DNA of 63,114 nt, filler included, from Octopus bimaculoides (taxonomy: Eukaryota): assembly GCF_001194135.2 (NCBI RefSeq). It is 5 parts of 5 records of this genome, joined end to end, with 100 filler letters (N's around TTAATTAATTAA, not from the genome) between each part and the next. Parts side by side here need not be neighbours in the genome. Positions count along the whole stretch, not along the records: positions 20,745 to 30,972 come from NC_068993.1; 4 more parts are not named here. One strand, written 5' to 3'. A model generated the notes under the pieces. It was not told where the DNA came from and made no database searches. It saw nothing but the letters and a program-made list of their open reading frames with translations. Shown in pieces: positions 6,340 to 31,072 of this stretch (position 1 is its first letter; each line of letters begins with the position of its first letter). The translations under genes and the position numbers were made by a program.

Positions 6340-6845
6340 TGTGGAGTTAACACCGAAGATATCACCCACATCATAAGCAGTTGTCCGAAAATGTCATCAC
6401 AGCATAATCTACCGATGAGACATGATGTTGTAGCTAGGACACTATGGAATGAAATCCGTCGGAAGGATAATCCCGAGGACAAAGAAATAAGAACCCACGG
6501 TATGGTAGAAGCCATAACTACTCATAATAAAAAGGAGTACTCGCGGAATGTCCCAGTGAAAACCCCAATAAAATGTAAGCACAACAGACCTGATATCATG
6601 ATTTGGGATATTGAGAAACTGCGTACAGTTGTGGAAATTAACTACCCAACGGGTGTTAATGCAAAGCTAAAGAACAGCGAAGAAGAAAATATCTACGCCG
6701 AACTATTGAGGAATCTACAGTTACTCTATCCAGATTACAAGTTCAGGTTTTATACCAATAATTATTGGGGCACTGGGATATGTAATACACTGCCTAAGTA
6801 TCAATCTTGAGAAATTAGACTTCTCAAAATCGGAAAGGAGAAAGC
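6340..6845 (+). mobile_element. Second, shorter copy of the same R4/Dong-like retrotransposon (endonuclease region, frameshifted)
   Basis: CGVNTEDITHIISSC...RHDVVARTL...HNRPDIMIWD...VVEIN aligns closely with the 23.4-24.5 kb copy. +1 frameshift near 6748. Similarity stops at AGAAAGC near 6845. 5' end abuts (ACAT)n. Confidence 0.88.
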
Positions 6846-20744: not shown

Positions 20745-20777
<33 letters not shown>

Positions 20778-21629
20778 TGTGTGTGTGTACGTGTGTATGC
20801 ATGTATGTATGTGTGTATGTATGTGTGTATGTATGTATGTGTGTATGTATGTATGTGTGTATGTATGTATTTCTTTGAAAGTACAAAGTTTTGTGGTGAT
20901 CATTATCGCTACTGACTTTGTTGTTGTGGAGTCGTTGATTTCGGTTTTTTTTTTCTACTTTTGGGTTGGGGAGAAGCCATTCCTTCGGTTGTATTTTTGA
21001 TGTTTGACCTCCTCTTCCATTGACCTTTTATGTCTTGTCCCTTGAGACAAATATTGTAGTTGGTTTGCAAAGGTTACTTGTGTTATAATTGATTAGAATA
21101 ACTTGCTTAAGGTTAATGTAGTTGGAGAACTAAAGTTTCAATGTTGCTACAATCTATCTCTCCCCCACCCACGTTGATCTGCAACAGAGGAATAGGTTTA
21201 AATAGATGATGTTTACACACATAAGCGTATATGTGTGCTTATATATTATACATACATACATAATACATACACATATATATATATGTATACATATATATAT
21301 ATATATATANNNNNNNNNNNNNNNNNNNNNNNNNNNNNNNNNNNNNNNNNNNNNNNNNNNNNNNNNNNNNNNNNNNNNNNNNNNNNNNNNNNNNNNNNNN
21401 NNNNNNNNNNNNNNNNNNNNNNNNAAACATAAAATTAAGTTTGAAGCCTATTGTATCATGCTTAATAAATAATATCAAGAGTATAAAAAATATATAAACC
21501 TTGATGCCGAGTGTACACGAAAGTATTTGTATTATAAATGTAATTAGAAATGGCTAGAGAGTAGTTTTCTTATATTCGTGTTTTATTAAACATAGATCTA
21601 TTTTCAAGTGTTATTTTTTTATTTTAGAT

Positions 21630-21861
21630 CAGGGGTTCTCAACCGGGGTTCATATGACCCTTGAGGGTCCATATAAGATGCTTTGTAATTAAAGTTTATG
21701 AGCAATAAATTAGTTATACTTCTATAATACACAAAATATTTAAACAATTTTTTATACAATCCTTTATAACTAATTATAAAAATATAACTGGATTTTTTTT
21801 AACATCAGAGTAAAATAGGAATTTAAGGAGTCCGTAAGCAAAAGACAATTGAGAATCACTG
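21630..21861. mobile_element. hAT (Charlie-like) MITE
   Basis: TIRs CAGGGGTTCTCAACC / AATTGAGAATCACTG; 8-bp flanks TTTTAGAT and TCTTAGAC (6/8 identical, NTCTAGAN-like). Confidence 0.8.
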
Positions 21862-23177
21862 TCTTAGACTTTTCGTATGTTGTCAGCTTTTTACGGTTGG
21901 TTTAGTTTCTAAAATCATCTTCGCCGTTTCTACACCTTCTGTTTCCCTTTCGAGAATTGAATGTATTGGGAGTTTGTGTTGTTTCTGGTTGAATTCCTGT
22001 TGACTTTTCTGTCAAATTTTTTGGCGGTTAGCTTCACGCATCAGCAGTTGATTTGTTTATCGAGTCAAATTTTCACCGTAAGTCTTTTGCTGTATTTTTT
22101 TATGCTACGGGTTAAATTTTTGATGTCTATGTTTTGCGATATGACTATTATTATCATAATCAATCTTCTATTGTTGTGAGGAATTTTATACTGTATGTAT
22201 ACTCTTCTAGTATTTTCCAATCTTTTTTTTTTTGTGCAGTGGGTGATGCAATGTTACACAATATTTCCACGCTATGAGTGCATGGTAAATCTATGTAAAT
22301 GATCCACTGTAAGAGCTAATGACCTGAAGTTTGCAGCTTTCAGTTTTACAGTAAAATTTATAGATCAGTTTGGTCTAATGTGATGCACCTTGTGTTCCGT
22401 TTTACGAGGATTTTAATTATGCAATGATATAACAATATATCGGGAAATGCACATCATAGAAATACACAAACAGCATATAAAAATCTAATACGTGAACTAA
22501 ATTCTCAAAAACTATCGAACAGACGAGCATATTACTATAATCCTCGTAAAGCAGAACACAAAAGGCAACACTCTCGACCATAAACTTAAACTATCACTGC
22601 ACTACAATGATGCCAAAACCAAAAACCTTCTTATCAATAACTAACCACAAGCTTGTAAACCCTCGAGAAAAACTGCGAATAGCCGATGCGATCAATAAAT
22701 CTTACTGTAAAACTGAAAGTTGCAAACTTCATGACTCTAGCTGAGACATTGAACAGATCAATACAACTCTCTCACGTAGGCTCGCTGAGAACTGTCACCT
22801 CCCATTTAACATTGCCTATCAACAGAGCTTGGTAAATAACAACGGAATGAAGATCTGGCGTTTCAAGGTGATCGTTCAATCTTTTAACGATTACTGCACA
22901 ATGATTGCATTTACTTGAGAAACGTATATTGATTATGTAATTTATGATGTATTGATTATGTAAATTATGATATAATTCTACTCTTGAATATACACACTGT
23001 AAATTATTCAAATGTGTATAATACAATAAAAAAAAAACAATCAGAGTCCAAATTATATCAAATACTTGTCAGAAATTTGGATACGCAGAAATTAACATGC
23101 AGTTCAAAGCATCGGTTAACCACTCTAAATGACAATCTTTCACTGGATACAAACAAACACACATCATATATGCACAC

Positions 23178-23181
<4 letters not shown>

Positions 23182-23208
<27 letters not shown>

Positions 23209-23364
23209 TGTATGTATGCATGTATGTATTTATGTATGTACGCAAGAACGTACGTATGTATGTATTTATGTATGTATTTATGTATGTATGTATTATGTAT
23301 GTATGTATGTATGTATGTATGTATGTATGTATGCATGTGCATGCATGTATTTATGTATGTATGT
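23182..23364. repeat. (TATG)n microsatellite at the 3' flank of the R4-like element
   Basis: Read directly from sequence. Confidence 0.95.
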
Positions 23365-24511
23365 CATTATTCAATTTTAGTTCAAGATTTCTTGCCAATA
23401 GAGAAAAAGTCGGTTTCTAACCAAGATCCAAGAATATCCTCCATGCTTCATTGGAATTTCCACAACATCAACAGGGTATTTTTTTACATGTATGTATGCG
23501 CATGTGCAGATTTGTATCTTTTATTTTATGTATGTCTTCTCATGCATATACTTACATATCTAGACATGCTCATATATACTTAAATGATAAACTTCTGGAA
23601 CGTTTTACAGATTTTTACAGTTCCAGTGATGGTTTGGATCAGTAATCTTCGAATTAGCTTTCTCTTTTCTGATTTTGAGAAGCCTAATTTTTCAAGACTG
23701 GTATTTATACAATGTGTTACATATCCCAGTGCTCCAATAATTACAGTTATAAGCCTGAACTTGTAATCTGGATTGAGTAACAGCAGATTTATCAATAGTT
23801 CAGCATAGGTATTCTTTTTTTCACTGATCTTCGTCTTTATATTAACATCTACTGGTCGGCTGATTTCCACAACTGTACATAGTTTATCTTTTCTATCCCA
23901 AATCATTATATTAGGTCTATTGTGTTTACATTTTAATGAGCTTTTCACAGAGACATTCCACCAGTATTCCTTTTTATTATGAGTGTCTATGGCTTCCACC
24001 ATACTGTGGGTTCTTATTTCTTTATCCTCGGGGTTACACTTCCAACAGATTTCCTTATATAGTGTCCTAGCTACAACATCATATCTCATCGGTAGATAAT
24101 AATGTGACGACATTTTCGTACAACTGCTTATGATGTGGGTGATATCTTCAGTGTTAACTCCACAAAGTCTACATCGGTTGTCACATTCTACTGCTTTTCC
24201 TGCATTGCTATCCCTTTTGTGCATCCGGTATTTGGTTGATATTTCCTGTTCCTGGATTGTAAACGCATACTCTTCAAAGTGGGTGGTACTAATCCAGTTG
24301 TTGGTCAACGATAGACTGCTTTGATGATCAATGTCATTATCATTTCAGAGTTCTCTTCGAACATATCCATGCGTGGCCTTCTGCTCATTCTTTCAGTCGA
24401 TAATATGTTACGGTAGAGTCGTGAGACTTCTTTGAGTATGTATTTCAGGTTATCATACGAGGAATGCTGCTCAAGGAACTGCCTTCCAGGTCTTATGATA
24501 TTATCAACCTC
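23365..24511 (-). mobile_element. 5'-truncated R4/Dong-like non-LTR retrotransposon (CCHC zinc knuckle + restriction-like endonuclease) with 3' UTR
   Basis: ORF 23580..24308: HFEEYAFTIQEQEISTKY, CRLCGVNTEDITHIISSC (CCHC), HNRPNIMIWD..CTVVEIS (PD-(D/E)xK-like, D>N), VIIGALG. About 215-nt 3' UTR ending AATAATG. Flanked on both sides by (ACAT)n. Confidence 0.9.
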
Positions 24512-24639
24512 ATGTATGTATATGTGTATGTATGTATGTATGTATGTATGTATGTATGCATGTATGTATGCATGTATGTATGTATGCATGCATGTATGTA
24601 TGCATGCATGTATGTATGCATGCATGTATGTATGTATGT
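24512..24639. repeat. (TATG)n/(TGCA) microsatellite at the 5' flank of the R4-like element
   Basis: Read directly from sequence. Confidence 0.95.
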
Positions 24640-25176
24640 AAAATAAGTGAAGCTTAAAAAGACAACACAAGAAAATTTAACAGCTTATTTGTCTAACTGC
24701 TATTCCTGTATTATCTTTTTTTCGCGTTCATCTTGCATTTAAGGCTGACGCGACCTCCTCCGGATTCGACCTCGTAACTACAACTCTGAGCTCTATATGA
24801 GATTACCACACGTATTCCTATGGATATCCATTTATAGATATATTGTATGGTTACCTTATTGTAGGTATGGTGGAATGCTTGGTGCTTATAAGGGAATGCA
24901 TGGTACTTATAGTAAAACACCATTTAATTGCGAGCACTACACATCTGTTGATGGGTGCTACATCAACATTACTAAAATGTATGCACAGGATATGTTGCAA
25001 GCCTGCATACATCTTCAAGCACAATAAACACATGCGTTATACACTCTTTGTTTACATGGTGAGAAACGTGTTTCACACACAGCACTGTTGGCGAACACTG
25101 GCAAATGCCACTGTCTGAATTTGTACAATGGCGTGACTTTGGTATACCTAAAAACATTTAGTTAATCGCTAGATCA

Positions 25177-25200
25177 ATGGTTCTCAACCTTTTTTGCCTG
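25177..25200 (+). mobile_element. Solo left TIR of a hAT (Charlie-like) element
   Basis: GCTAGAT|CAATGGTTCTCAACCTTTTTTG; right TIR not identified. Confidence 0.4.
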
Positions 25201-25970
25201 AAGATTCTAACATGAATATGCTAATCACTGCTGATTTCGTCACAGGGGAACAGATTCTCCTTTACGATGAACATGTGTTCATAACACACTCGATTCATAA
25301 GTGCAAGGGATTCCAGGACATCCAAGGTTTTGACATCATTGTGTCTCATCAACCGGAAGTACCCCTGGACCAAAGAATCTAACAAGTGCCGAGGGTCCAA
25401 TCCATAATTTCAGCGAACAAGCTGTTTGTTGATCGGTGCTGATAACTGACAACCGATATATGAACATTATATGCAAGCTTTCTTGCTTCTCAAGCGATCT
25501 TGTCCTTTCACTGGTCAGTCGTTTATTTTTTTCCATCTTTGTCTAAATCTTGTTTTTTCCAAAGCCGACAGACACATTATCTTTCCCCCTTATCGTGCAA
25601 TACTTACCTTTCTATCATTTTTATTTATCGATGTCTCTATCCATCTGTCCACCCATCCATCCATCCATCTCTATATCTATCTATGACCCTGTCTGTATAT
25701 CTGACTCTTTATATATCTATCTACCTATCTATCTATTCCTCTTTGTACTTGCCTTCCTATTGCTTTTCCTGTTTACCATTTTCACATAACTGTTTCTTTT
25801 TCTCTATTTTTGTATTATTCTTTCAATTTTTGCGTTCATTTACCTGTCTATCGTATTTACACTCAGTCTTCCATCATTGTAATCTAACTATGCTTATCTC
25901 TATCCATCACTTTCTCTCCTCATTTCATACTTCCAGCTCTGTTTTATCTCCGAAACAACACTCGCACCTC

Positions 25971-26019
<49 letters not shown>

Positions 26020-26281
26020 NNNNNNNNNNNNNNNNNNNNNNNNNNNNNNNNNNNNNNNNNNNNNNNNNNNNNNNNNNNNNNNNNNNNNNNNNNNNNNNNN
26101 NNNNNNNNNNNNNNNNNNNNNNNNNNNNNNNNNNNNNNNNNNNNNNNNNNNNNNNNNNNNNNNNNNNNNNNNNNNNNNNNNNNNNNNNNNNNNNNNNNNN
26201 NNNNNNNNNNNNNNNNNNNNNNNNNNNNNNNNNNNNNNNNNNNNNNNNNNNNNNNNNNNNNNNNNNNNNNNNNNNNNNNNN

Positions 26282-26329
<48 letters not shown>

Positions 26330-26971
26330 GTTTTATATTTTCAATGTTTCTGTCCTCGTCTATATTTTTGTCTTTGCATATATTATTTTTCTGCTCTCCT
26401 CGAAACACGTCTTTATTCACTGTTCAGTCTACATACTACACATTTTATTTTTATTATTGTACTTCTCTCAATATTTTTCTGTCCTTCTAGTTTCTCATGT
26501 CCGATCGTTTATATTCTAGTTGCGTACGTTCATGACACACCAAATTTAAATTATATTGCTGGGGAGTATCGGAATTGTGATGTTATTTGGTTGACAACTG
26601 ATGAGAGTTGAACTTGTCTGCATCCGTTGTTTGTGTTGTTCTCTGTATTTAGTTCAGAGAATTCGTCGTCCTCTTTTACCACATTTTTATCATACATAGA
26701 TAGATACACTCACATATATATGTGGCGGGTGTATGTATGTACATCTAAATAATACAAATACACACACACTTACACACACCTCCCTTCGGCGATCCCTTCT
26801 TCGTATATTCACACCATTCGCATACATTCGCATACCTCTATTCATCTATCTTATCTCTATGAAACACAGATATTCACATTGGTATGCGGATACGATAACA
26901 CCACGCACGCACGCACACACACACACACACACATACACACACATACACAAACAAACACACACACACACAAA

Positions 26972-27005
<34 letters not shown>

Positions 27006-27628
27006 TACACACACACACGCAAACAAGCAAACACACGAACGAACACAAACACACATATAAACACTTTCACACTCTACATTGCTTGACAGCTTTGCATCAC
27101 ATTTTTCCCCCGTCTTTTCACCAACCATTTGTGATCAACTATTACTCACTGTTCAGCTTGCCAACGCTGAAAGCACATACATAGACACACACAACACATA
27201 TAAACATGCAACGAATGGCACTATCCTTCAACATTTGCACACTTCAATACGTATACACAGAACATACCAACACGCACGTCACTACCACTCATGCTTGTCT
27301 TCAGACAAAAACACCCTTTGATACTTGCATCAACACACCTCTGCTTTTAACTGTTCAAAAGAACAGCATTCCCACCTCGTTTCCAACCCTTTGCATTCAT
27401 TTCTTTCAATATCTATTTCTTCCTTACTCCCTCTATGCTCCTCTCTTTTTTTTTTTCTTCTGATGGATGGCTAGCGTTCGAAAGGTTTAAGTCACTCTTT
27501 TTTCATTAAGGCATTAAACTACTAACATATTTGACAAATTTTGTCCTTCCTGTATCATCTTTTCAATGTTCATTGTCTTTATACAATACATACATACATA
27601 TGTGTGTATGTGTGTGCGTGTGTGTGTG

Positions 27629-27659
<31 letters not shown>

Positions 27660-27751
27660 ACGTATGTATGTATGTATGTATGTATGCATGTATGTATGTA
27701 TGTATGTATGTATGTATGTGTATATATATTCTTTTATTCTTTTATTCTTTT

Positions 27752-27958
27752 ACCCTTTTACTTGTTTCAGTCATTTGACTGCTGCCATGCTGGAGTACCG
27801 CCTTTAGTCGAACAAATCGATCCCAGGACTTATTCTTTGTAAGCCAAGTACTTATTCTATCGATTTATTTGGCCGAACATAAATGATGTGGATATGAGAA
27901 CATAAACACATCAACATCTGTTGTCAAATGATGATGAGGGACAAACACAGACACACAA

Positions 27959-27993
<35 letters not shown>

Positions 27994-28172
27994 AGCCCGT
28001 CGTATATATATGACGGGCTTCTTTCAGTTTCCATCTACTAAATTCACTCACAAAGCTTTGGCCGGCCCAAGGTTATAGTAGAAGATACTTGCCCAAGGTG
28101 CCACGCAGTGGGACTGAACCTGGAACCATGTGGTTGGGAAGCGAGCTTCTTACCACACACCCACACGCCTGC
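27752..28172 (-). mobile_element. OR-like SINE with internal (TA)n
   Basis: Reverse complement of the 37115-37500 element; head, core, SSR and tail present. Confidence 0.88.
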
Positions 28173-28606
28173 ACCATATAGTTCACTACATCTGTTTCTT
28201 ACGTATCTTTTTAATAGAAGAATGAGAACATTACTCCGTTACAAAAAGCCGTAATCGTCAGATGAAACGTAACTTTACAAACAAAAAAATATCCCAAGAA
28301 TACAGCAGGGGCGTGGCTGAAGTCTGTCGATACCAACTATGAAATTTGAGATTGATTAACAAAGTTGGCCGTTGAGGTTAAGAATATAGTTTGTGAAAGG
28401 GTGTAATATGATATCTAAGGTCTGCGACCCAAGTGAGATAGGAGTCTGCTACACTAGTTCTTAGGTAGGCTGGAGTGGGGGTGTAGGTAATATTTTATTA
28501 TAGCAGGCATAGAGCAGTGGGTAGCAAGGAGAGGACCTAAGATAAATTAAGGATAAACAATAAAGAAAACTAAAGCAATAAAAAAAGTGAATAAAAATAA
28601 CAAATT

Positions 28607-28897
28607 GCAGTCATATCCTGGTTACATCATTACAGAATACAAGTTCTCGTTCCTTCAATTTGATATAAATGCATAGCATTCAAGAATATCCTCCATACTC
28701 CTAAATAAGGCCCTAATTTATGCAAGAAACTTCACAGCCATTACCAATGGTAAGATTGAAATTATTCTATTAGCTAGAAGAGCTATAATTGAATTTGAAG
28801 GTAGTATGTGGACGAGAAGTGACACCCGACAATTTTGATATAGCCATGGGTCGAGCGACTCGGCCCAGATTACTGACATTGTAGGAATCTACCTTTT
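28607..28897 (+). mobile_element. Penelope-like element reverse-transcriptase fragment
   Basis: With frameshifts: KFSFLQFDI..*.SRISSILLNKALIYAR...IEIILLARRAII...W...FDIAMG(S)SDSAQITDIVGIYL, matching the PLE RT pattern FDI..FYPSI..LL.KAL / FDVTMGSYDGAE..ELVG.Y.L. Confidence 0.75.
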
Positions 28898-28999
28898 TCA
28901 TTACCTTATATATATATATATATATAAAACAAGCAAATATATATACACACACACATACACACACATACACACACACACATACACACACACATACACACA

Positions 29000-29045
<46 letters not shown>

Positions 29046-29710
29046 TATATATGAGAGAGAGAGGGTAAGACAGATTGTATTAGTTCCGTGGAAATTGAAT
29101 CAGACAAAGGTGCCTACTTTCAAATGTAGCAACTTAATACAGGATACATGTACAGAGTTATATTCTTTGTTTTTAATACAAATAATGGTATATTCTTTAG
29201 ACAATTACATGGCATATATCGAACAATCCATTAAAGTACACAGTTTCATCGAGTAAACAAAGAACGTATGCGAGCACCATTACATACAAAAGCTTCTTAC
29301 TAACATCATGGGTACGTGTTTGTCTGTGCGTGTGTGTGTGTGGTTGTGTGTGTGTGGTTGTGTGTGTGAGCGTGTGTGTGTGCGTGCGTGCATTCTTCCT
29401 TACTTTGGACATTGTCTTCAATTCAATATCATTACTTGTTGAAGGCTTTTCAATTAATATTAAAATATATACACGTGACTATAGGTATTCAGCTAATGGG
29501 ATATCAAGATTTAAAGCTTACCACTGAGGAACTATTTCTGGAGCGATGTTTGATTCTTGACAGGTGCTGTCAATATAGATATATCTGGTAATAAAATTTA
29601 AAAAATAAATCCATTGGTAATCTAGATTAAGTCAGCGTCTGTATGTTAACTAATGTATAATTAAATTATATCTAGGTCACACGAGCAAATATGATGTCAA
29701 TATGTTTGCA

Positions 29711-29743
<33 letters not shown>

Positions 29744-30602
29744 ATGTGTGTATGTGTGCGTGTGGGGNNNNNNNNNNGGGGGGTGTCTTTGTGTGTGTGT
29801 GTGTGTGTGTGTGTGAGTAGTGAGTGTTAGCATATGGACATAGCTTGCCACTTCAATTCACCAAGCCAGTTACCTTGCATTTGGCTGTTCGTAGGGTTTT
29901 ACAACATTATGAAACACCAGTTTCCTATCTGTCGTTGCTTTTCCTGGTATCAATAACCAACGTGTCTTTTCTGGAAATACACACATGCACATACACACTC
30001 ACACACACACACAGACACACATACACACACACGCGCATACACACACACGTACACACACACAGCACACACACGTGTACATGCACATACGCACGTGCACACA
30101 CAGGAGCACGCACGTATGCACGCACACGCACGCAAGTACATGCATGCACGCACGCACACGCATGCGCATATGCACACCACATTCACGCACACACACACCT
30201 CAATAAACGGTTATACGTGCATTTTCACAACATCTCCCTTTTTCTTTCCATATATTCATATATAATTAGTTATACCTTTACGAGCCGTACATTCCCACAC
30301 TTCACAAACACTCATACACACATTCTATGGAGTGTTGCTCATGGCTTCAACACAATTTCTTACAATTCAACACAATGCAATACCACGCAGTAGCACACCT
30401 CACAGGTTTACACTCACCTATATAAACATTAATTCCCACAGGCATACAAATTCGTGGTTGAAAAAATGTTTCATTTCTCTTAACCACAAATATTTATGCC
30501 TGTTACTCTTATTTGGATGTAAATAAACCAACCCCGGTTGTCGAGCAATGGTGCGATAAACACAAAAACATATATACATATCATATATGCATATATAATA
30601 CG

Positions 30603-30730
30603 TATAGAATAAGTACTAGGCTTACAAAAAATAAGTCCTGGGATCGATTTGTTCGACTAAAGGCGGTGCTCCAGCATGACCGCAGTCAAATGACTGAAAC
30701 AGGTAAAAGAGTAAAAGAGTAAAAGAGAGT
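30603..30730 (+). mobile_element. Well-preserved OR-like SINE tail with (GTAAAAGA)n end
   Basis: tagaataagtactaggcttac...gactgaaacaggtaaaagagtaaaagagtaaaagag. Confidence 0.85.
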
Positions 30731-31072
30731 ATATATATATATATATATTTATATATTATATAGATAATATAGATATATGTATATATCCATACATATATGT
30801 ACATACCTACATCTATATGTATACATACATGCATATATGGGTACAGGACAAAAAAAACGTTAAACTCAATAAGAAACGAAAACATAAAAACGAAAACAGA
30901 AAACGAACTTTTTTCGAGCAACGAAAACAAACAGAGAAACGAGACATGCAACATAAAGAGTATACCCCTTCGNNNNNNNNNNNNNNNNNNNNNNNNNNNN
31001 NNNNNNNNNNNNNNNNTTAATTAATTAANNNNNNNNNNNNNNNNNNNNNNNNNNNNNNNNNNNNNNNNNNNN

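What the first reader, a model, noticed from the sequence alone, without database searches (positions are those of the whole stretch)
23182..24639. Candidate (ACAT)n-microsatellite-specific R4/Dong-clade retrotransposon
Seen: a 5'-truncated element with CCHC knuckle, restriction-like endonuclease and 3' UTR sits inside a tetranucleotide repeat. On the element strand the junctions are ...ACATACAT|GAGGTTG and AATAATG|ACATACAT..., so both fit insertion at ACAT^ACAT. A second copy at 6340 has the same 5' register. Established: restriction-like-endonuclease LINEs (R2, R4, NeSL, CRE) are often sequence specific, and Dong elements target (TAA)n. Inference: a lineage retargeted to (ACAT)n, using one of this genome's commonest SSRs as a very large safe-harbour pool and perhaps propagating it by target duplication. 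I do not know of a described (ACAT)n-specific family but could not search Repbase/Dfam.
Basis: partly seen in the sequence, partly recalled or inferred. Interest (0 to 1): 0.78.

Follow-up and report, generated by a model that had tools for sequence, protein, structure and literature searches.

The report
Octopus jumping gene targeting (ACAT)n repeats
A dead, front-truncated copy of an abundant octopus retrotransposon sits inside an (ACAT)n microsatellite, and its relatives show that this Dong-like lineage inserts specifically, in a fixed orientation and phase, into tetranucleotide repeats rather than into the (TAA)n repeats used by classical Dong elements.

Summary
On the minus strand, window 24509-23366 holds a 1144-bp, 5'-truncated, inactivated copy of a LINE with a restriction-like endonuclease (RLE). 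It keeps a CCHC knuckle, the RLE and the 3' UTR, and (ACAT)n lies on both sides.

The host is Octopus bimaculoides. The family has roughly 2,500 copies, and nearly all end in (ACAT)n. At least 13 other truncated copies have (ACAT)n directly upstream. DNA beyond this copy's 5' array is single copy, so that array is not another element's tail.

Fourteen further copies were scored in other animals. Every one has the same repeat on both sides, always on the same strand: (ACAT)n in five, (ACTT)n in four, (TAA)n in five.

In a C-terminal-domain tree, the tetranucleotide-flanked elements form a 100%-supported clade. Its sister clade is (TAA)n-flanked (Dong-like) and comes from an insect, a coral and a fish. 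ACAT and ACTT users are interspersed.

The family is already labelled "Dong" or "Dong-R4" in octopus repeat libraries. I found no paper describing this target. It is a new target variant of a known kind, of moderate interest.

The parts
24512..24640 (-). 5' flank: (ACAT)n array, about 32 units with CATG variants. It abuts single-copy DNA at 24641 onward.
   Evidence: TRF; sequence; read depth drops to about 2 beyond 24647.
24309..24509 (-). 5'-truncated start of the element. This is the linker region between RT and the CCHC knuckle; no RT is left. Relative to copy L001 it is broken by a stop (TGA at 24347-24345, where L001 has CGA) and an approximately 10-nt deletion near 24375.
   Evidence: Alignment to P0007/L001; reading; tblastn.
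24120..24173 (-). CCHC zinc knuckle, CRLCGVNTEDITHIISSC (aa 46-63).
   Evidence: aligns to the CCHC of R2 proteins; weak Pfam zf-RVT hit.
23721..23924 (-). Restriction-like endonuclease core: HNRP(N)I, VVEIS, K..EK..Y and IGALG. In this copy the family's RPD is RPN and SCPAD is SRPVD, so the catalytic site is probably dead.
   Evidence: Alignment A1; profile match to the RLE of R2 structures 9nl3 and 9dou; coordinates.
23580..24308 (-). The 242-aa ORF, the C-terminal part of the single LINE protein.
   Evidence: homologues at E 1e-66 to 1e-35.
23484..23540 (-). Degenerate internal (ACAT)n inside the 3' UTR, variable in length among copies. Some copies end here.
   Evidence: In one search, 637 reads show a (GTAT)n loose end at 23483. 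In one search, contigs join the 3' flank directly to 23526 and 23533.
23366..23483 (-). Conserved 3'-terminal module of the 3' UTR, ending ...TTGAATAATG(A).
   Evidence: Depth about 1,700-2,900. Predicted fold is not unusual (z = -1.0).
23179..23364 (-). 3' flank: (ACAT)n array, about 46 units. It is a mix of target and tail that cannot be separated.
   Evidence: TRF. Family-wide, read depth continues from the element into (TATG)n, and the window's odd T at 23351 is G in 672 of 789 reads.

Best explanation
The feature is a dead, 5'-truncated copy of an abundant Octopus bimaculoides LINE, with roughly 2,500 copies at 80% likeness. The LINE has a single ORF with RT, a CCHC knuckle and a restriction-like endonuclease.

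It belongs to a tetranucleotide-repeat-targeting sister lineage of the (TAA)n-specific Dong elements (R4/Dong group).

Shown:
- Members lie inside (CATA)n or (CTTA)n arrays.
- The repeat is always on the sense strand.
- Both junctions are compatible with insertion between A and C of the repeat, in phase.

Inferred mechanism, by analogy with R2 and Dong:
1. The protein binds its own 3' UTR RNA and recognises the (CWTA)n duplex, probably through the conserved N-terminal Myb-like domain together with the RLE.
2. It nicks the bottom strand.
3. The exposed (TATG)n 3' end anneals to the (ACAU)n run that read-through transcription adds to the RNA, and it primes reverse transcription.
4. The cDNA often stops early, which gives 5' truncation.
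5. The 5' end is joined to the upstream part of the array, sometimes at internal ACAT-like microhomology, as in this copy.

The repeat is extremely common in this genome, so it offers a large and mostly harmless landing pool.
For: Organism: P0007 is an O. bimaculoides protein and locus L001 is GCA_001194135.2.

Copy number and truncation profile: depth about 1,800-2,000 in about 0.7x of reads.

3' junction, family-wide: depth is 2,017 at the element end. It is still 1,939, 1,723 and 1,441 at 4, 8 and 12 nt into the flank, and the flank consensus is pure (TATG)n.

5' junctions in octopus: contigs or reads join element positions 23482, 23550, 23631, 23636, 23992, 24022, 24023, 24101, 24187, 24320, 24333/4 and 24343 to the (TATG)n flank. 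The 5' array abuts single-copy DNA.

Relatives with both ends present all have the same repeat on both sides, on the sense strand.
- (ACAT)n: L002, L005, L010 x3.
- (ACTT)n: L003, L004, L006, L009.
- (TAA)n: L007 x2, L011, L012.

Phase: five 11-12-nt 3'-end mini-fragments in L005 each sit between ...CATA and CATA....

Tree: the tetranucleotide clade and the (TAA)n clade each have 100% bootstrap.

Architecture:
- L010 holds an intact 1225-aa ORF with RVT_1 followed by zf-RVT.
- The RT and RLE match R2 structures.
- There is a conserved N-terminal domain without zinc fingers.

Literature: R4/Dong elements insert into rDNA or microsatellites and carry an N-terminal Myb-like domain (PMC7998251).

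Repeat abundance: a pure 32-nt (TATG)n collects depth of about 16,000.
Against: - No full-length octopus copy was obtained, so RT and N-terminus are known only from relatives at 35-50% identity.
- The share of octopus copies with (ACAT)n upstream could not be quantified, because read laying lists only the best-supported joints.
- No empty orthologous site was examined.
- The clade assignment rests on a neighbour-joining tree of the C-terminal domain and on (TAA)n-flanked outgroups. No bona fide Dong, R4, Rex6 or HERO reference sequences were available.
- HMMER did not recognise the N-terminal domain as Myb.
- The phase argument uses about a dozen junctions, several with one ambiguous base.
- Nothing here separates protein-directed from RNA-tail-directed target choice.
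Confidence: 0.85

Rival explanations
1. Target choice is set mainly by the RNA, not the protein. The endonuclease needs only a short motif such as TA^C. Productive priming requires pairing between the nicked repeat and the repeat run carried at the 3' end of the read-through transcript. A copy that lands in or next to a different repeat would then pass the new specificity on to its progeny.
For: - ACAT and ACTT users are interspersed in the tree.
- L002 ((ACAT)n) is 81% identical in DNA to L003 ((ACTT)n) over its whole length. That includes a homologous 3' UTR end, TAATAATGGAATATAT..ATGAAA.
- The cut phase TA^C is shared by both repeats.
Against: - CATA and CTTA differ at one base, so one DNA-binding surface tolerant of W at that position would explain the same data.
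- R2 and the proposed Dong Myb-like domain argue for protein recognition (PMC7998251).
- (ACTT)n was not seen in the octopus piece, so availability alone may decide which repeat is used.
- No experiment was done.
Confidence: 0.25
2. The repeat is only a self-made 3' tail, as in many LINEs. The upstream arrays are coincidences, or are tails of older neighbouring elements, so there is no target specificity.
For: - Nearly all copies end in (ACAT)n.
- Tandem copies separated by short repeats exist (joints; L007; L010).
- The repeat covers about 5% of the local sequence.
Against: - All nine scored tetranucleotide-flanked relatives, and the five (TAA)n-flanked ones, have the same repeat directly upstream, always in the same orientation.
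- In L002, L003 and L004 the upstream array is far longer than the downstream one.
- The window's 5' array abuts single-copy DNA.
- In L005, L006 and L009 the upstream arrays begin in sequence that does not resemble the element's 3' end.
Confidence: 0.03
3. The family belongs to another RLE clade, for example HERO, some families of which are microsatellite-specific, or a NeSL-related group like the (TG)n-specific Togen. It would then not be R4/Dong.
For: - No reference Dong, R4, Rex6 or HERO sequences could be included.
- The N-terminal Myb-like domain was not confirmed.
- PMC4640811 notes microsatellite-specific HERO families and Togen.
Against: - The nearest outgroup in the C-terminal tree consists of (TAA)n-flanked elements from an insect, a coral and a fish, which is the Dong hallmark.
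- Full length is about 4.1 kb with one ORF and no N-terminal zinc fingers.
- Published octopus annotations call the abundant RLE LINE 'Dong' or 'Dong-R4' and find HERO and R2 rare (PMC13282606, PMC9115989).
Confidence: 0.1

Closest known systems
Dong (R4/Dong clade RLE LINEs; Bombyx mori Dong, DongAg, DongBg and relatives)
   Same: - Single ORF with RT, then a CCHC knuckle, then a restriction-like endonuclease.
- About 4 kb full length.
- No N-terminal zinc fingers, but a conserved N-terminal helical domain.
- Strict, orientation-specific insertion into a microsatellite that also forms the 3' tail.
- Frequent 5' truncation and head-to-tail nesting within one array.
   Different: The target is a tetranucleotide repeat, (CATA)n in octopus and (CATA)n or (CTTA)n in relatives, not (TAA)n. 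The tetranucleotide users form their own 100%-supported clade, sister to the (TAA)n-flanked elements sampled here.
Waldo (WaldoAg1/2, WaldoFs1; R1 clade)
   Same: Inserts specifically into (ACAY)n microsatellites, which is essentially the same target repeat (PMC3812793).
   Different: Waldo is an APE-type LINE of the R1 clade, with an N-terminal apurinic-like endonuclease. The octopus element has a C-terminal restriction-like endonuclease. The shared target is convergent.
R2 (28S rDNA-specific RLE LINE; solved structures 8gh6, 9nl3, 9dou)
   Same: The RT and the CCHC-RLE module are detectably homologous. R2 is the mechanistic model for target-primed reverse transcription with a sequence-specific first nick.
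   Different: R2 targets one site in 28S rDNA through N-terminal zinc-finger and Myb domains. The element here targets a dispersed simple repeat and lacks N-terminal zinc fingers.
Togen (NeSL-related, fish) and microsatellite-specific HERO families
   Same: They are RLE LINEs with microsatellite targets; Togen uses (TG)n (PMC4640811).
   Different: They use different repeats and belong to different clades.

Membership tests
R4/Dong clade of RLE non-LTR retrotransposons | One ORF with a reverse transcriptase followed by a CCHC knuckle and a C-terminal restriction-like (PD-(D/E)xK) endonuclease. | tested here: met
   The window copy keeps the CCHC and RLE. Relatives carry RVT_1 upstream in the same ORF (P0014, P0015, P0025; L010 has an intact 1225-aa ORF). 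The RT and RLE align to R2 structures. The window copy itself has lost the RT through 5' truncation.
R4/Dong clade of RLE non-LTR retrotransposons | Site-specific insertion into rDNA or a microsatellite (PMC7998251). | tested here: met
   The same repeat lies on both sides, on the sense strand, in the window copy and in all fourteen scored relatives (nine tetranucleotide, five (TAA)n). This is supported by the family-wide 3' junction and by at least 13 further 5' junctions in octopus.
R4/Dong clade of RLE non-LTR retrotransposons | Divergent N-terminal Myb/SANT-like domain and no N-terminal zinc fingers (PMC7998251). | tested here: inconclusive
   Full-length relatives share an N-terminal block, W-T-x-E ... 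Y ... GY..R ... W ... P.L ... L, and have no C2H2 or CCHH motifs. HMMER against Pfam and PDB sequences finds no Myb; the published detection needed HHpred. No full-length octopus copy was available.
R4/Dong clade of RLE non-LTR retrotransposons | RT-domain phylogeny groups the element with reference Dong, R4 and Rex6 sequences. | not testable with these tools
   No Repbase/Dfam or named reference sequences could be retrieved. As a proxy, in a neighbour-joining tree of the C-terminal domain the nearest clade (100% bootstrap) consists of (TAA)n-flanked elements from Diaphorina, Oculina and Nothobranchius. Published octopus annotations label the abundant RLE LINE 'Dong' or 'Dong-R4' (PMC9115989, PMC13282606).
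Dong sensu stricto | Target and tail are (TAA)n. | tested here: not met
   The flanks are (ACAT)n in the window and family-wide. No (TAA)n of four or more units occurs in the piece.
Waldo (R1 clade, (ACAY)n-specific) | N-terminal apurinic/apyrimidinic-type endonuclease; R1-clade RT. | tested here: not met
   The endonuclease is a C-terminal restriction-like domain homologous to that of R2. Full-length relatives show no APE domain in Pfam.
R2 clade | N-terminal zinc finger(s) plus Myb; insertion at a fixed 28S rDNA site. | tested here: not met
   Full-length relatives have no N-terminal zinc fingers. All flanks are simple repeats, not rDNA.

The most novel reading that the evidence does not exclude
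In this lineage the repeat run carried on the 3' end of the transcript, not the protein, decides where the element can integrate. Target specificity would then be heritable through the tail and could switch, for example from (CATA)n to (CTTA)n, without any protein change. That would make it a naturally RNA-programmed RLE retrotransposon.
Probability: 0.2. Interest if true: 0.8.

Novelty: new variant of a known kind. Interest (0 to 1): 0.5.

Why it matters
Site-specific RLE retrotransposons, above all R2, are now being developed as tools for break-free gene insertion. How they choose and change targets is therefore a practical question.

This lineage offers a natural series of close relatives that use (TAA)n, (CATA)n or (CTTA)n, all with a fixed cut phase. 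Some pairs are about 80% identical in DNA yet use different repeats. [quoted passage not shown]

For cephalopod genomics, it means that a LINE family of thousands of copies is confined to one of the genome's commonest simple repeats. This may explain why tools such as MELT found few new 'Dong' insertions. It also bears on how repeat arrays are interrupted and on how they are annotated.

Tried and rejected
All later calls used flanks shorter than 31 nt.
- L001 (O. bimaculoides LOC106878562) and L008 (Hydractinia) are old fragments without ends and gave no junctions.
- A third protein search with P0007 returned no further octopus proteins. No full-length octopus copy or 5' end could be studied.
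- The fraction of octopus copies with (ACAT)n upstream could not be measured. Only the 15 best-supported joints and 6 loose ends per run are listed, and most loose ends reflect subfamily divergence, for example at 24334 and 24343.
- Microhomology at 5' joints is clear for the window copy and for positions 24333/4. It is not a general rule.
- The 3' UTR shows no exceptional fold (z = -1.0).
- ARAGORN found no tRNA in the tRNA-like sequence upstream of the L003 array.
- I tested whether the abundant octopus SINE in the window shares the (ACAT)n tail and could be this LINE's partner. Its 3' flank consensus is heterogeneous and A/T-rich, not (TATG)n, and this SINE copy has no repeat upstream. The idea was dropped.
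- Pfam and PDB sequence searches did not identify the N-terminal domain.
- Literature searches for an (ACAT)n-specific R4/Dong element found none. Repbase and Dfam could not be queried, so prior cataloguing of the target cannot be excluded.

Full report
**What is in the window.** Tandem Repeats Finder reports (TATG)n on the + strand at 23179-23364 and 24512-24640. Between these arrays, on the minus strand, lies a 1144-bp retrotransposon fragment at 24509-23366. It consists of three parts:
- about 200 nt of coding sequence (24509-24309);
- a 242-aa ORF (24308-23580);
- a 214-nt 3' UTR (23579-23366).

The ORF carries C-x2-C-x8-H-x4-C (aa 46-63; 24173-24120). It also carries the motifs HNRP(N)I, VVEIS, K..EK..Y and IGALG (23924-23721). 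A profile of the family aligns these to the CCHC and restriction-like endonuclease of solved R2 proteins (9nl3 and 9dou, E about 2e-5).

**State of this copy.** It is dead.
- It has no reverse transcriptase, because of 5' truncation.
- It has a TGA at 24347-24345 where the related copy L001 has CGA.
- It has a deletion of about 10 nt near 24375 that shifts the frame.
- The family's RPD and SCPAD motifs read RPN and SRPVD.

**Organism and family size.** The closest named protein is an "uncharacterized protein" of Octopus bimaculoides (P0007). Its locus L001 comes from GCA_001194135.2. About 0.7x of raw genomic reads laid on the element at 80% likeness give a depth of about 1,800-2,000 over the 3' two-thirds. 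That corresponds to roughly 2,500 copies. The fall in depth beyond 24340 is partly this copy's own divergence: the loose ends there match the homologous sequence of L001.

**3' junction across the family.** With 28 nt of flank included, depth is 2,017 at the last element bases. It is still 1,939, 1,723 and 1,441 at 4, 8 and 12 nt into the flank. At 23351 the window's atypical T is G in 672 of 789 reads, so the consensus flank is pure (TATG)n. Essentially all copies therefore end in (ACAT)n. On its own this would also fit a self-made tail.

**5' junctions in octopus.** Contigs and reads from O. bimaculoides join internal element positions directly to the (TATG)n flank. The positions are 23482, 23550, 23631, 23636, 23992, 24022, 24023, 24101, 24187, 24320, 24333/4 and 24343. 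These are independent copies, truncated at different places, that have (ACAT)n upstream. The tool lists only the best-supported joints, so I cannot give the fraction of copies.

The DNA beyond this copy's own 5' array (24647-24800) is single copy, with depth about 2. The upstream array is therefore not the tail of another repeat.

In L001 the place homologous to the window's truncation point reads CCATACATGATT. Up to nine bases at the window's 5' junction (CATACATGA) may therefore belong to the element. The junction lies in a microhomology.

**Relatives elsewhere.** Protein searches and look-ups of the encoding contigs gave eleven further loci. Nine of them hold copies with intact ends, and three of those hold more than one copy. 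Every scored copy has the same simple repeat on both sides, always with the same strand on the sense side.

| Locus | Source | 5' flank | 3' flank |
|---|---|---|---|
| L002 | unidentified host (ENA assembly contig) | (ACAT), about 50 units | (ACAT)3 |
| L003 | unidentified host (ENA assembly contig) | (ACTT)21 | (ACTT)6 |
| L004 | unidentified host (ENA assembly contig) | (CTTA)38 | (CTTA)6 |
| L005 | unidentified host (ENA assembly contig) | (ACAT)66 | (CATA)56 |
| L006 | unidentified host (ENA assembly contig) | (TTAC)8 | (ACTT)27 |
| L009 (near full length, 4.09 kb) | unidentified host (ENA assembly contig) | (ACTT)18 | (CTTA)75 |
| L010 (three elements head to tail) | unidentified host (ENA assembly contig) | one (ACAT)n array | same array |
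| L007 (two nested copies) | Diaphorina citri | (TAA)n | (TAA)n |
| L011 | Oculina patagonica | (TAA)n | (TAA)n |
| L012 | Nothobranchius furzeri | (TAA)n | (TAA)n |

One element in L010 has an intact 1225-aa ORF.

Loci were chosen by protein similarity alone. This makes coincidence, and a tail-only explanation, untenable.

**Phase of insertion.** Every 5' flank can be read as ending ...CATA| or ...CTTA|. Every 3' flank can be read as starting |CATA... or |CTTA.... In L005 the upstream array holds five 11-12-nt fragments of an element 3' end (ATGAATGTAAAG). Each lies exactly between ...CATA and CATA.... These are extreme 5' truncations at the same phase.

The data fit in-phase insertion between A and C of the repeat (TA^C). 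The sample is about a dozen junctions, and several contain one ambiguous base.

**Clade.** I could not obtain reference Dong, R4, Rex6 or HERO sequences. As a proxy I built a neighbour-joining tree of 244 aligned C-terminal columns, rooted on R2.
- All tetranucleotide-flanked elements fall in one clade with 100% bootstrap support.
- The sister clade, also 100%, holds the (TAA)n-flanked insect, coral and fish elements.
- Within the tetranucleotide clade, the two L010 (ACAT)n elements branch first.
- (ACAT)n and (ACTT)n users are interspersed above them.
- L002 ((ACAT)n) groups inside L003 and L006 ((ACTT)n) with 100% support. L002 and L003 are 81% identical in DNA, including a homologous 3' UTR end.

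(TAA)n flanks are the Dong hallmark. Schön et al. state that R4/Dong elements insert into rDNA or microsatellites. [quoted passage not shown]

Full-length relatives here have a conserved N-terminal block and no zinc fingers. HMMER does not call it Myb.

Published octopus annotations already label the abundant RLE LINE "Dong" or "Dong-R4":
- There is a full-length consensus in the 2015 O. bimaculoides library (PMC9115989).
- O. vulgaris has five families with 1,129 recent insertions, against 13 for HERO and 1 for R2 (PMC13282606).

I conclude that the element belongs to the R4/Dong group, in a tetranucleotide-targeting sister lineage of the (TAA)n Dongs.

**Mechanism.** Three things are shown: the repeat lies at both ends, the orientation is fixed, and the phase is consistent. 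By analogy with R2 and Dong, I infer sequence-specific nicking of the repeat. The exposed (TATG)n end would then prime on the (ACAU)n run of a read-through transcript, with frequent early termination.

Whether the protein or the RNA tail sets specificity is open.
- The repeated ACAT/ACTT switches among close relatives, and the shared TA^C phase, allow an RNA-guided reading.
- A DNA-binding surface tolerant of CWTA explains the same data.
- That protein-directed reading has the better precedent.

**Known versus new.** The following microsatellite-targeting LINEs are known (PMC3812793, PMC4640811):

| Element | Target | Type |
|---|---|---|
| Dong | (TAA)n | R4/Dong clade RLE LINE |
| Togen | (TG)n | NeSL-related RLE LINE |
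| some HERO families | microsatellites | RLE LINE |
| Waldo | (ACAY)n | APE type, R1 clade |
| Mino | (AC)n | APE type |
| Kibi | (TC)n | APE type |
| Koshi | (TTC)n | APE type |

I found no paper describing an (ACAT)n- or (ACTT)n-specific R4/Dong lineage. Repbase and Dfam could not be searched. The finding is a new target variant of a known kind, in a family whose sequence is already catalogued.

**Side results.**
- The 3' UTR contains an internal (ACAT)n of variable length. In one search, 637 reads show a (GTAT)n loose end at 23483, and some copies end at this internal repeat.
- The 3' UTR has no exceptional predicted fold.
- A pure 32-nt (TATG)n collects a depth of about 16,000, so the repeat is extremely abundant in this genome.
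- The abundant SINE in the window is not tailed by (ACAT)n as a rule and is not evidently this LINE's partner.

Noticed in passing
window 27722-28190 (minus strand) and 30540-30725 (plus strand): Two copies of a tRNA-type SINE. It has the head ...GGTAAGAAGCTCGCTTCCCAACCACATGGTTCCAGGTTCAGTCCCACTGCGTGGCACC, the core ...CGACTAAAGGCGGTNCTCCAGCATG.CCGCAGTCAAATGACTGAAAC, and a (GTAAAAGA)n tail. The core has read depth of about 64,000 in 0.7x, or roughly 90,000 copies. Its 3' flank consensus is heterogeneous and A/T-rich, not (TATG)n. The first copy merely lies next to an (ACAT)n/(AC)n array and has no repeat upstream.
   Followed up: partly
window 23484-23540 (minus strand): The LINE's 3' UTR holds an internal (ACAT)n of variable length, followed by a conserved terminal module of about 118 nt. 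Some genomic copies end at the internal repeat and lack the module (joints 23364 to 23526 and 23533). This suggests two alternative 3' ends, or a captured downstream segment in the master copy.
   Followed up: partly
L005 1992-2283: The (ACAT)n array upstream of the element is peppered with five 11-12-nt fragments (ATGAATGTAAAG and variants). They look like the extreme 3' end of a related subfamily, and each lies between ...CATA and CATA.... They are apparently abortive insertions only a dozen bases long.
   Followed up: yes
L010 788-10612: Three elements of the lineage lie head to tail in one (ACAT)n array, separated by only 7-9 repeat units. The first has an intact 1225-aa ORF. Their 3' ends differ, so they belong to different subfamilies.
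   Followed up: partly
L001 8117-9846 and 10001-10837: The NCBI gene LOC106878562 of O. bimaculoides ('uncharacterized protein') is a fragment of this LINE family, truncated at both ends. It lies beside an array of 84-bp C2H2 zinc-finger repeat units. It is likely a transposon fragment annotated as a gene.
   Followed up: no
L003 5540-5810: Directly upstream of the 5' (TTAC)n array lies a tRNA-like sequence (GCGATAGCGTAGTGGTTGG...GGTTCGAATCCCAC). It could be a SINE whose tail is the (ACTT)n array into which the LINE inserted. ARAGORN does not call a tRNA there.
   Followed up: partly
P0122 / L008 (Hydractinia symbiolongicarpus) versus octopus P0007: A hydrozoan element is 42% identical to the octopus protein over its whole length. 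That is as close as the unidentified relatives found on ENA assembly contigs. Either the family is strongly conserved or it has moved between phyla. The hosts of the ERZ25... contigs are unknown.
   Followed up: no
window 20745-30972: All four (TATG)n arrays in the piece (20748-20870, 23179-23364, 24512-24640, 27599-27719) have the same strand orientation. The piece also holds many (AC)n and (TG)n arrays and two runs of N (about 21310-21430 and 26020-26280), with no evident host gene.
   Followed up: no
L009 6-1571: A 17-bp satellite (GTTTATTCATCGACAAA, about 85 copies, followed by an inverted block) lies 1.5 kb upstream of the near-full-length (ACTT)n-flanked element.
   Followed up: no
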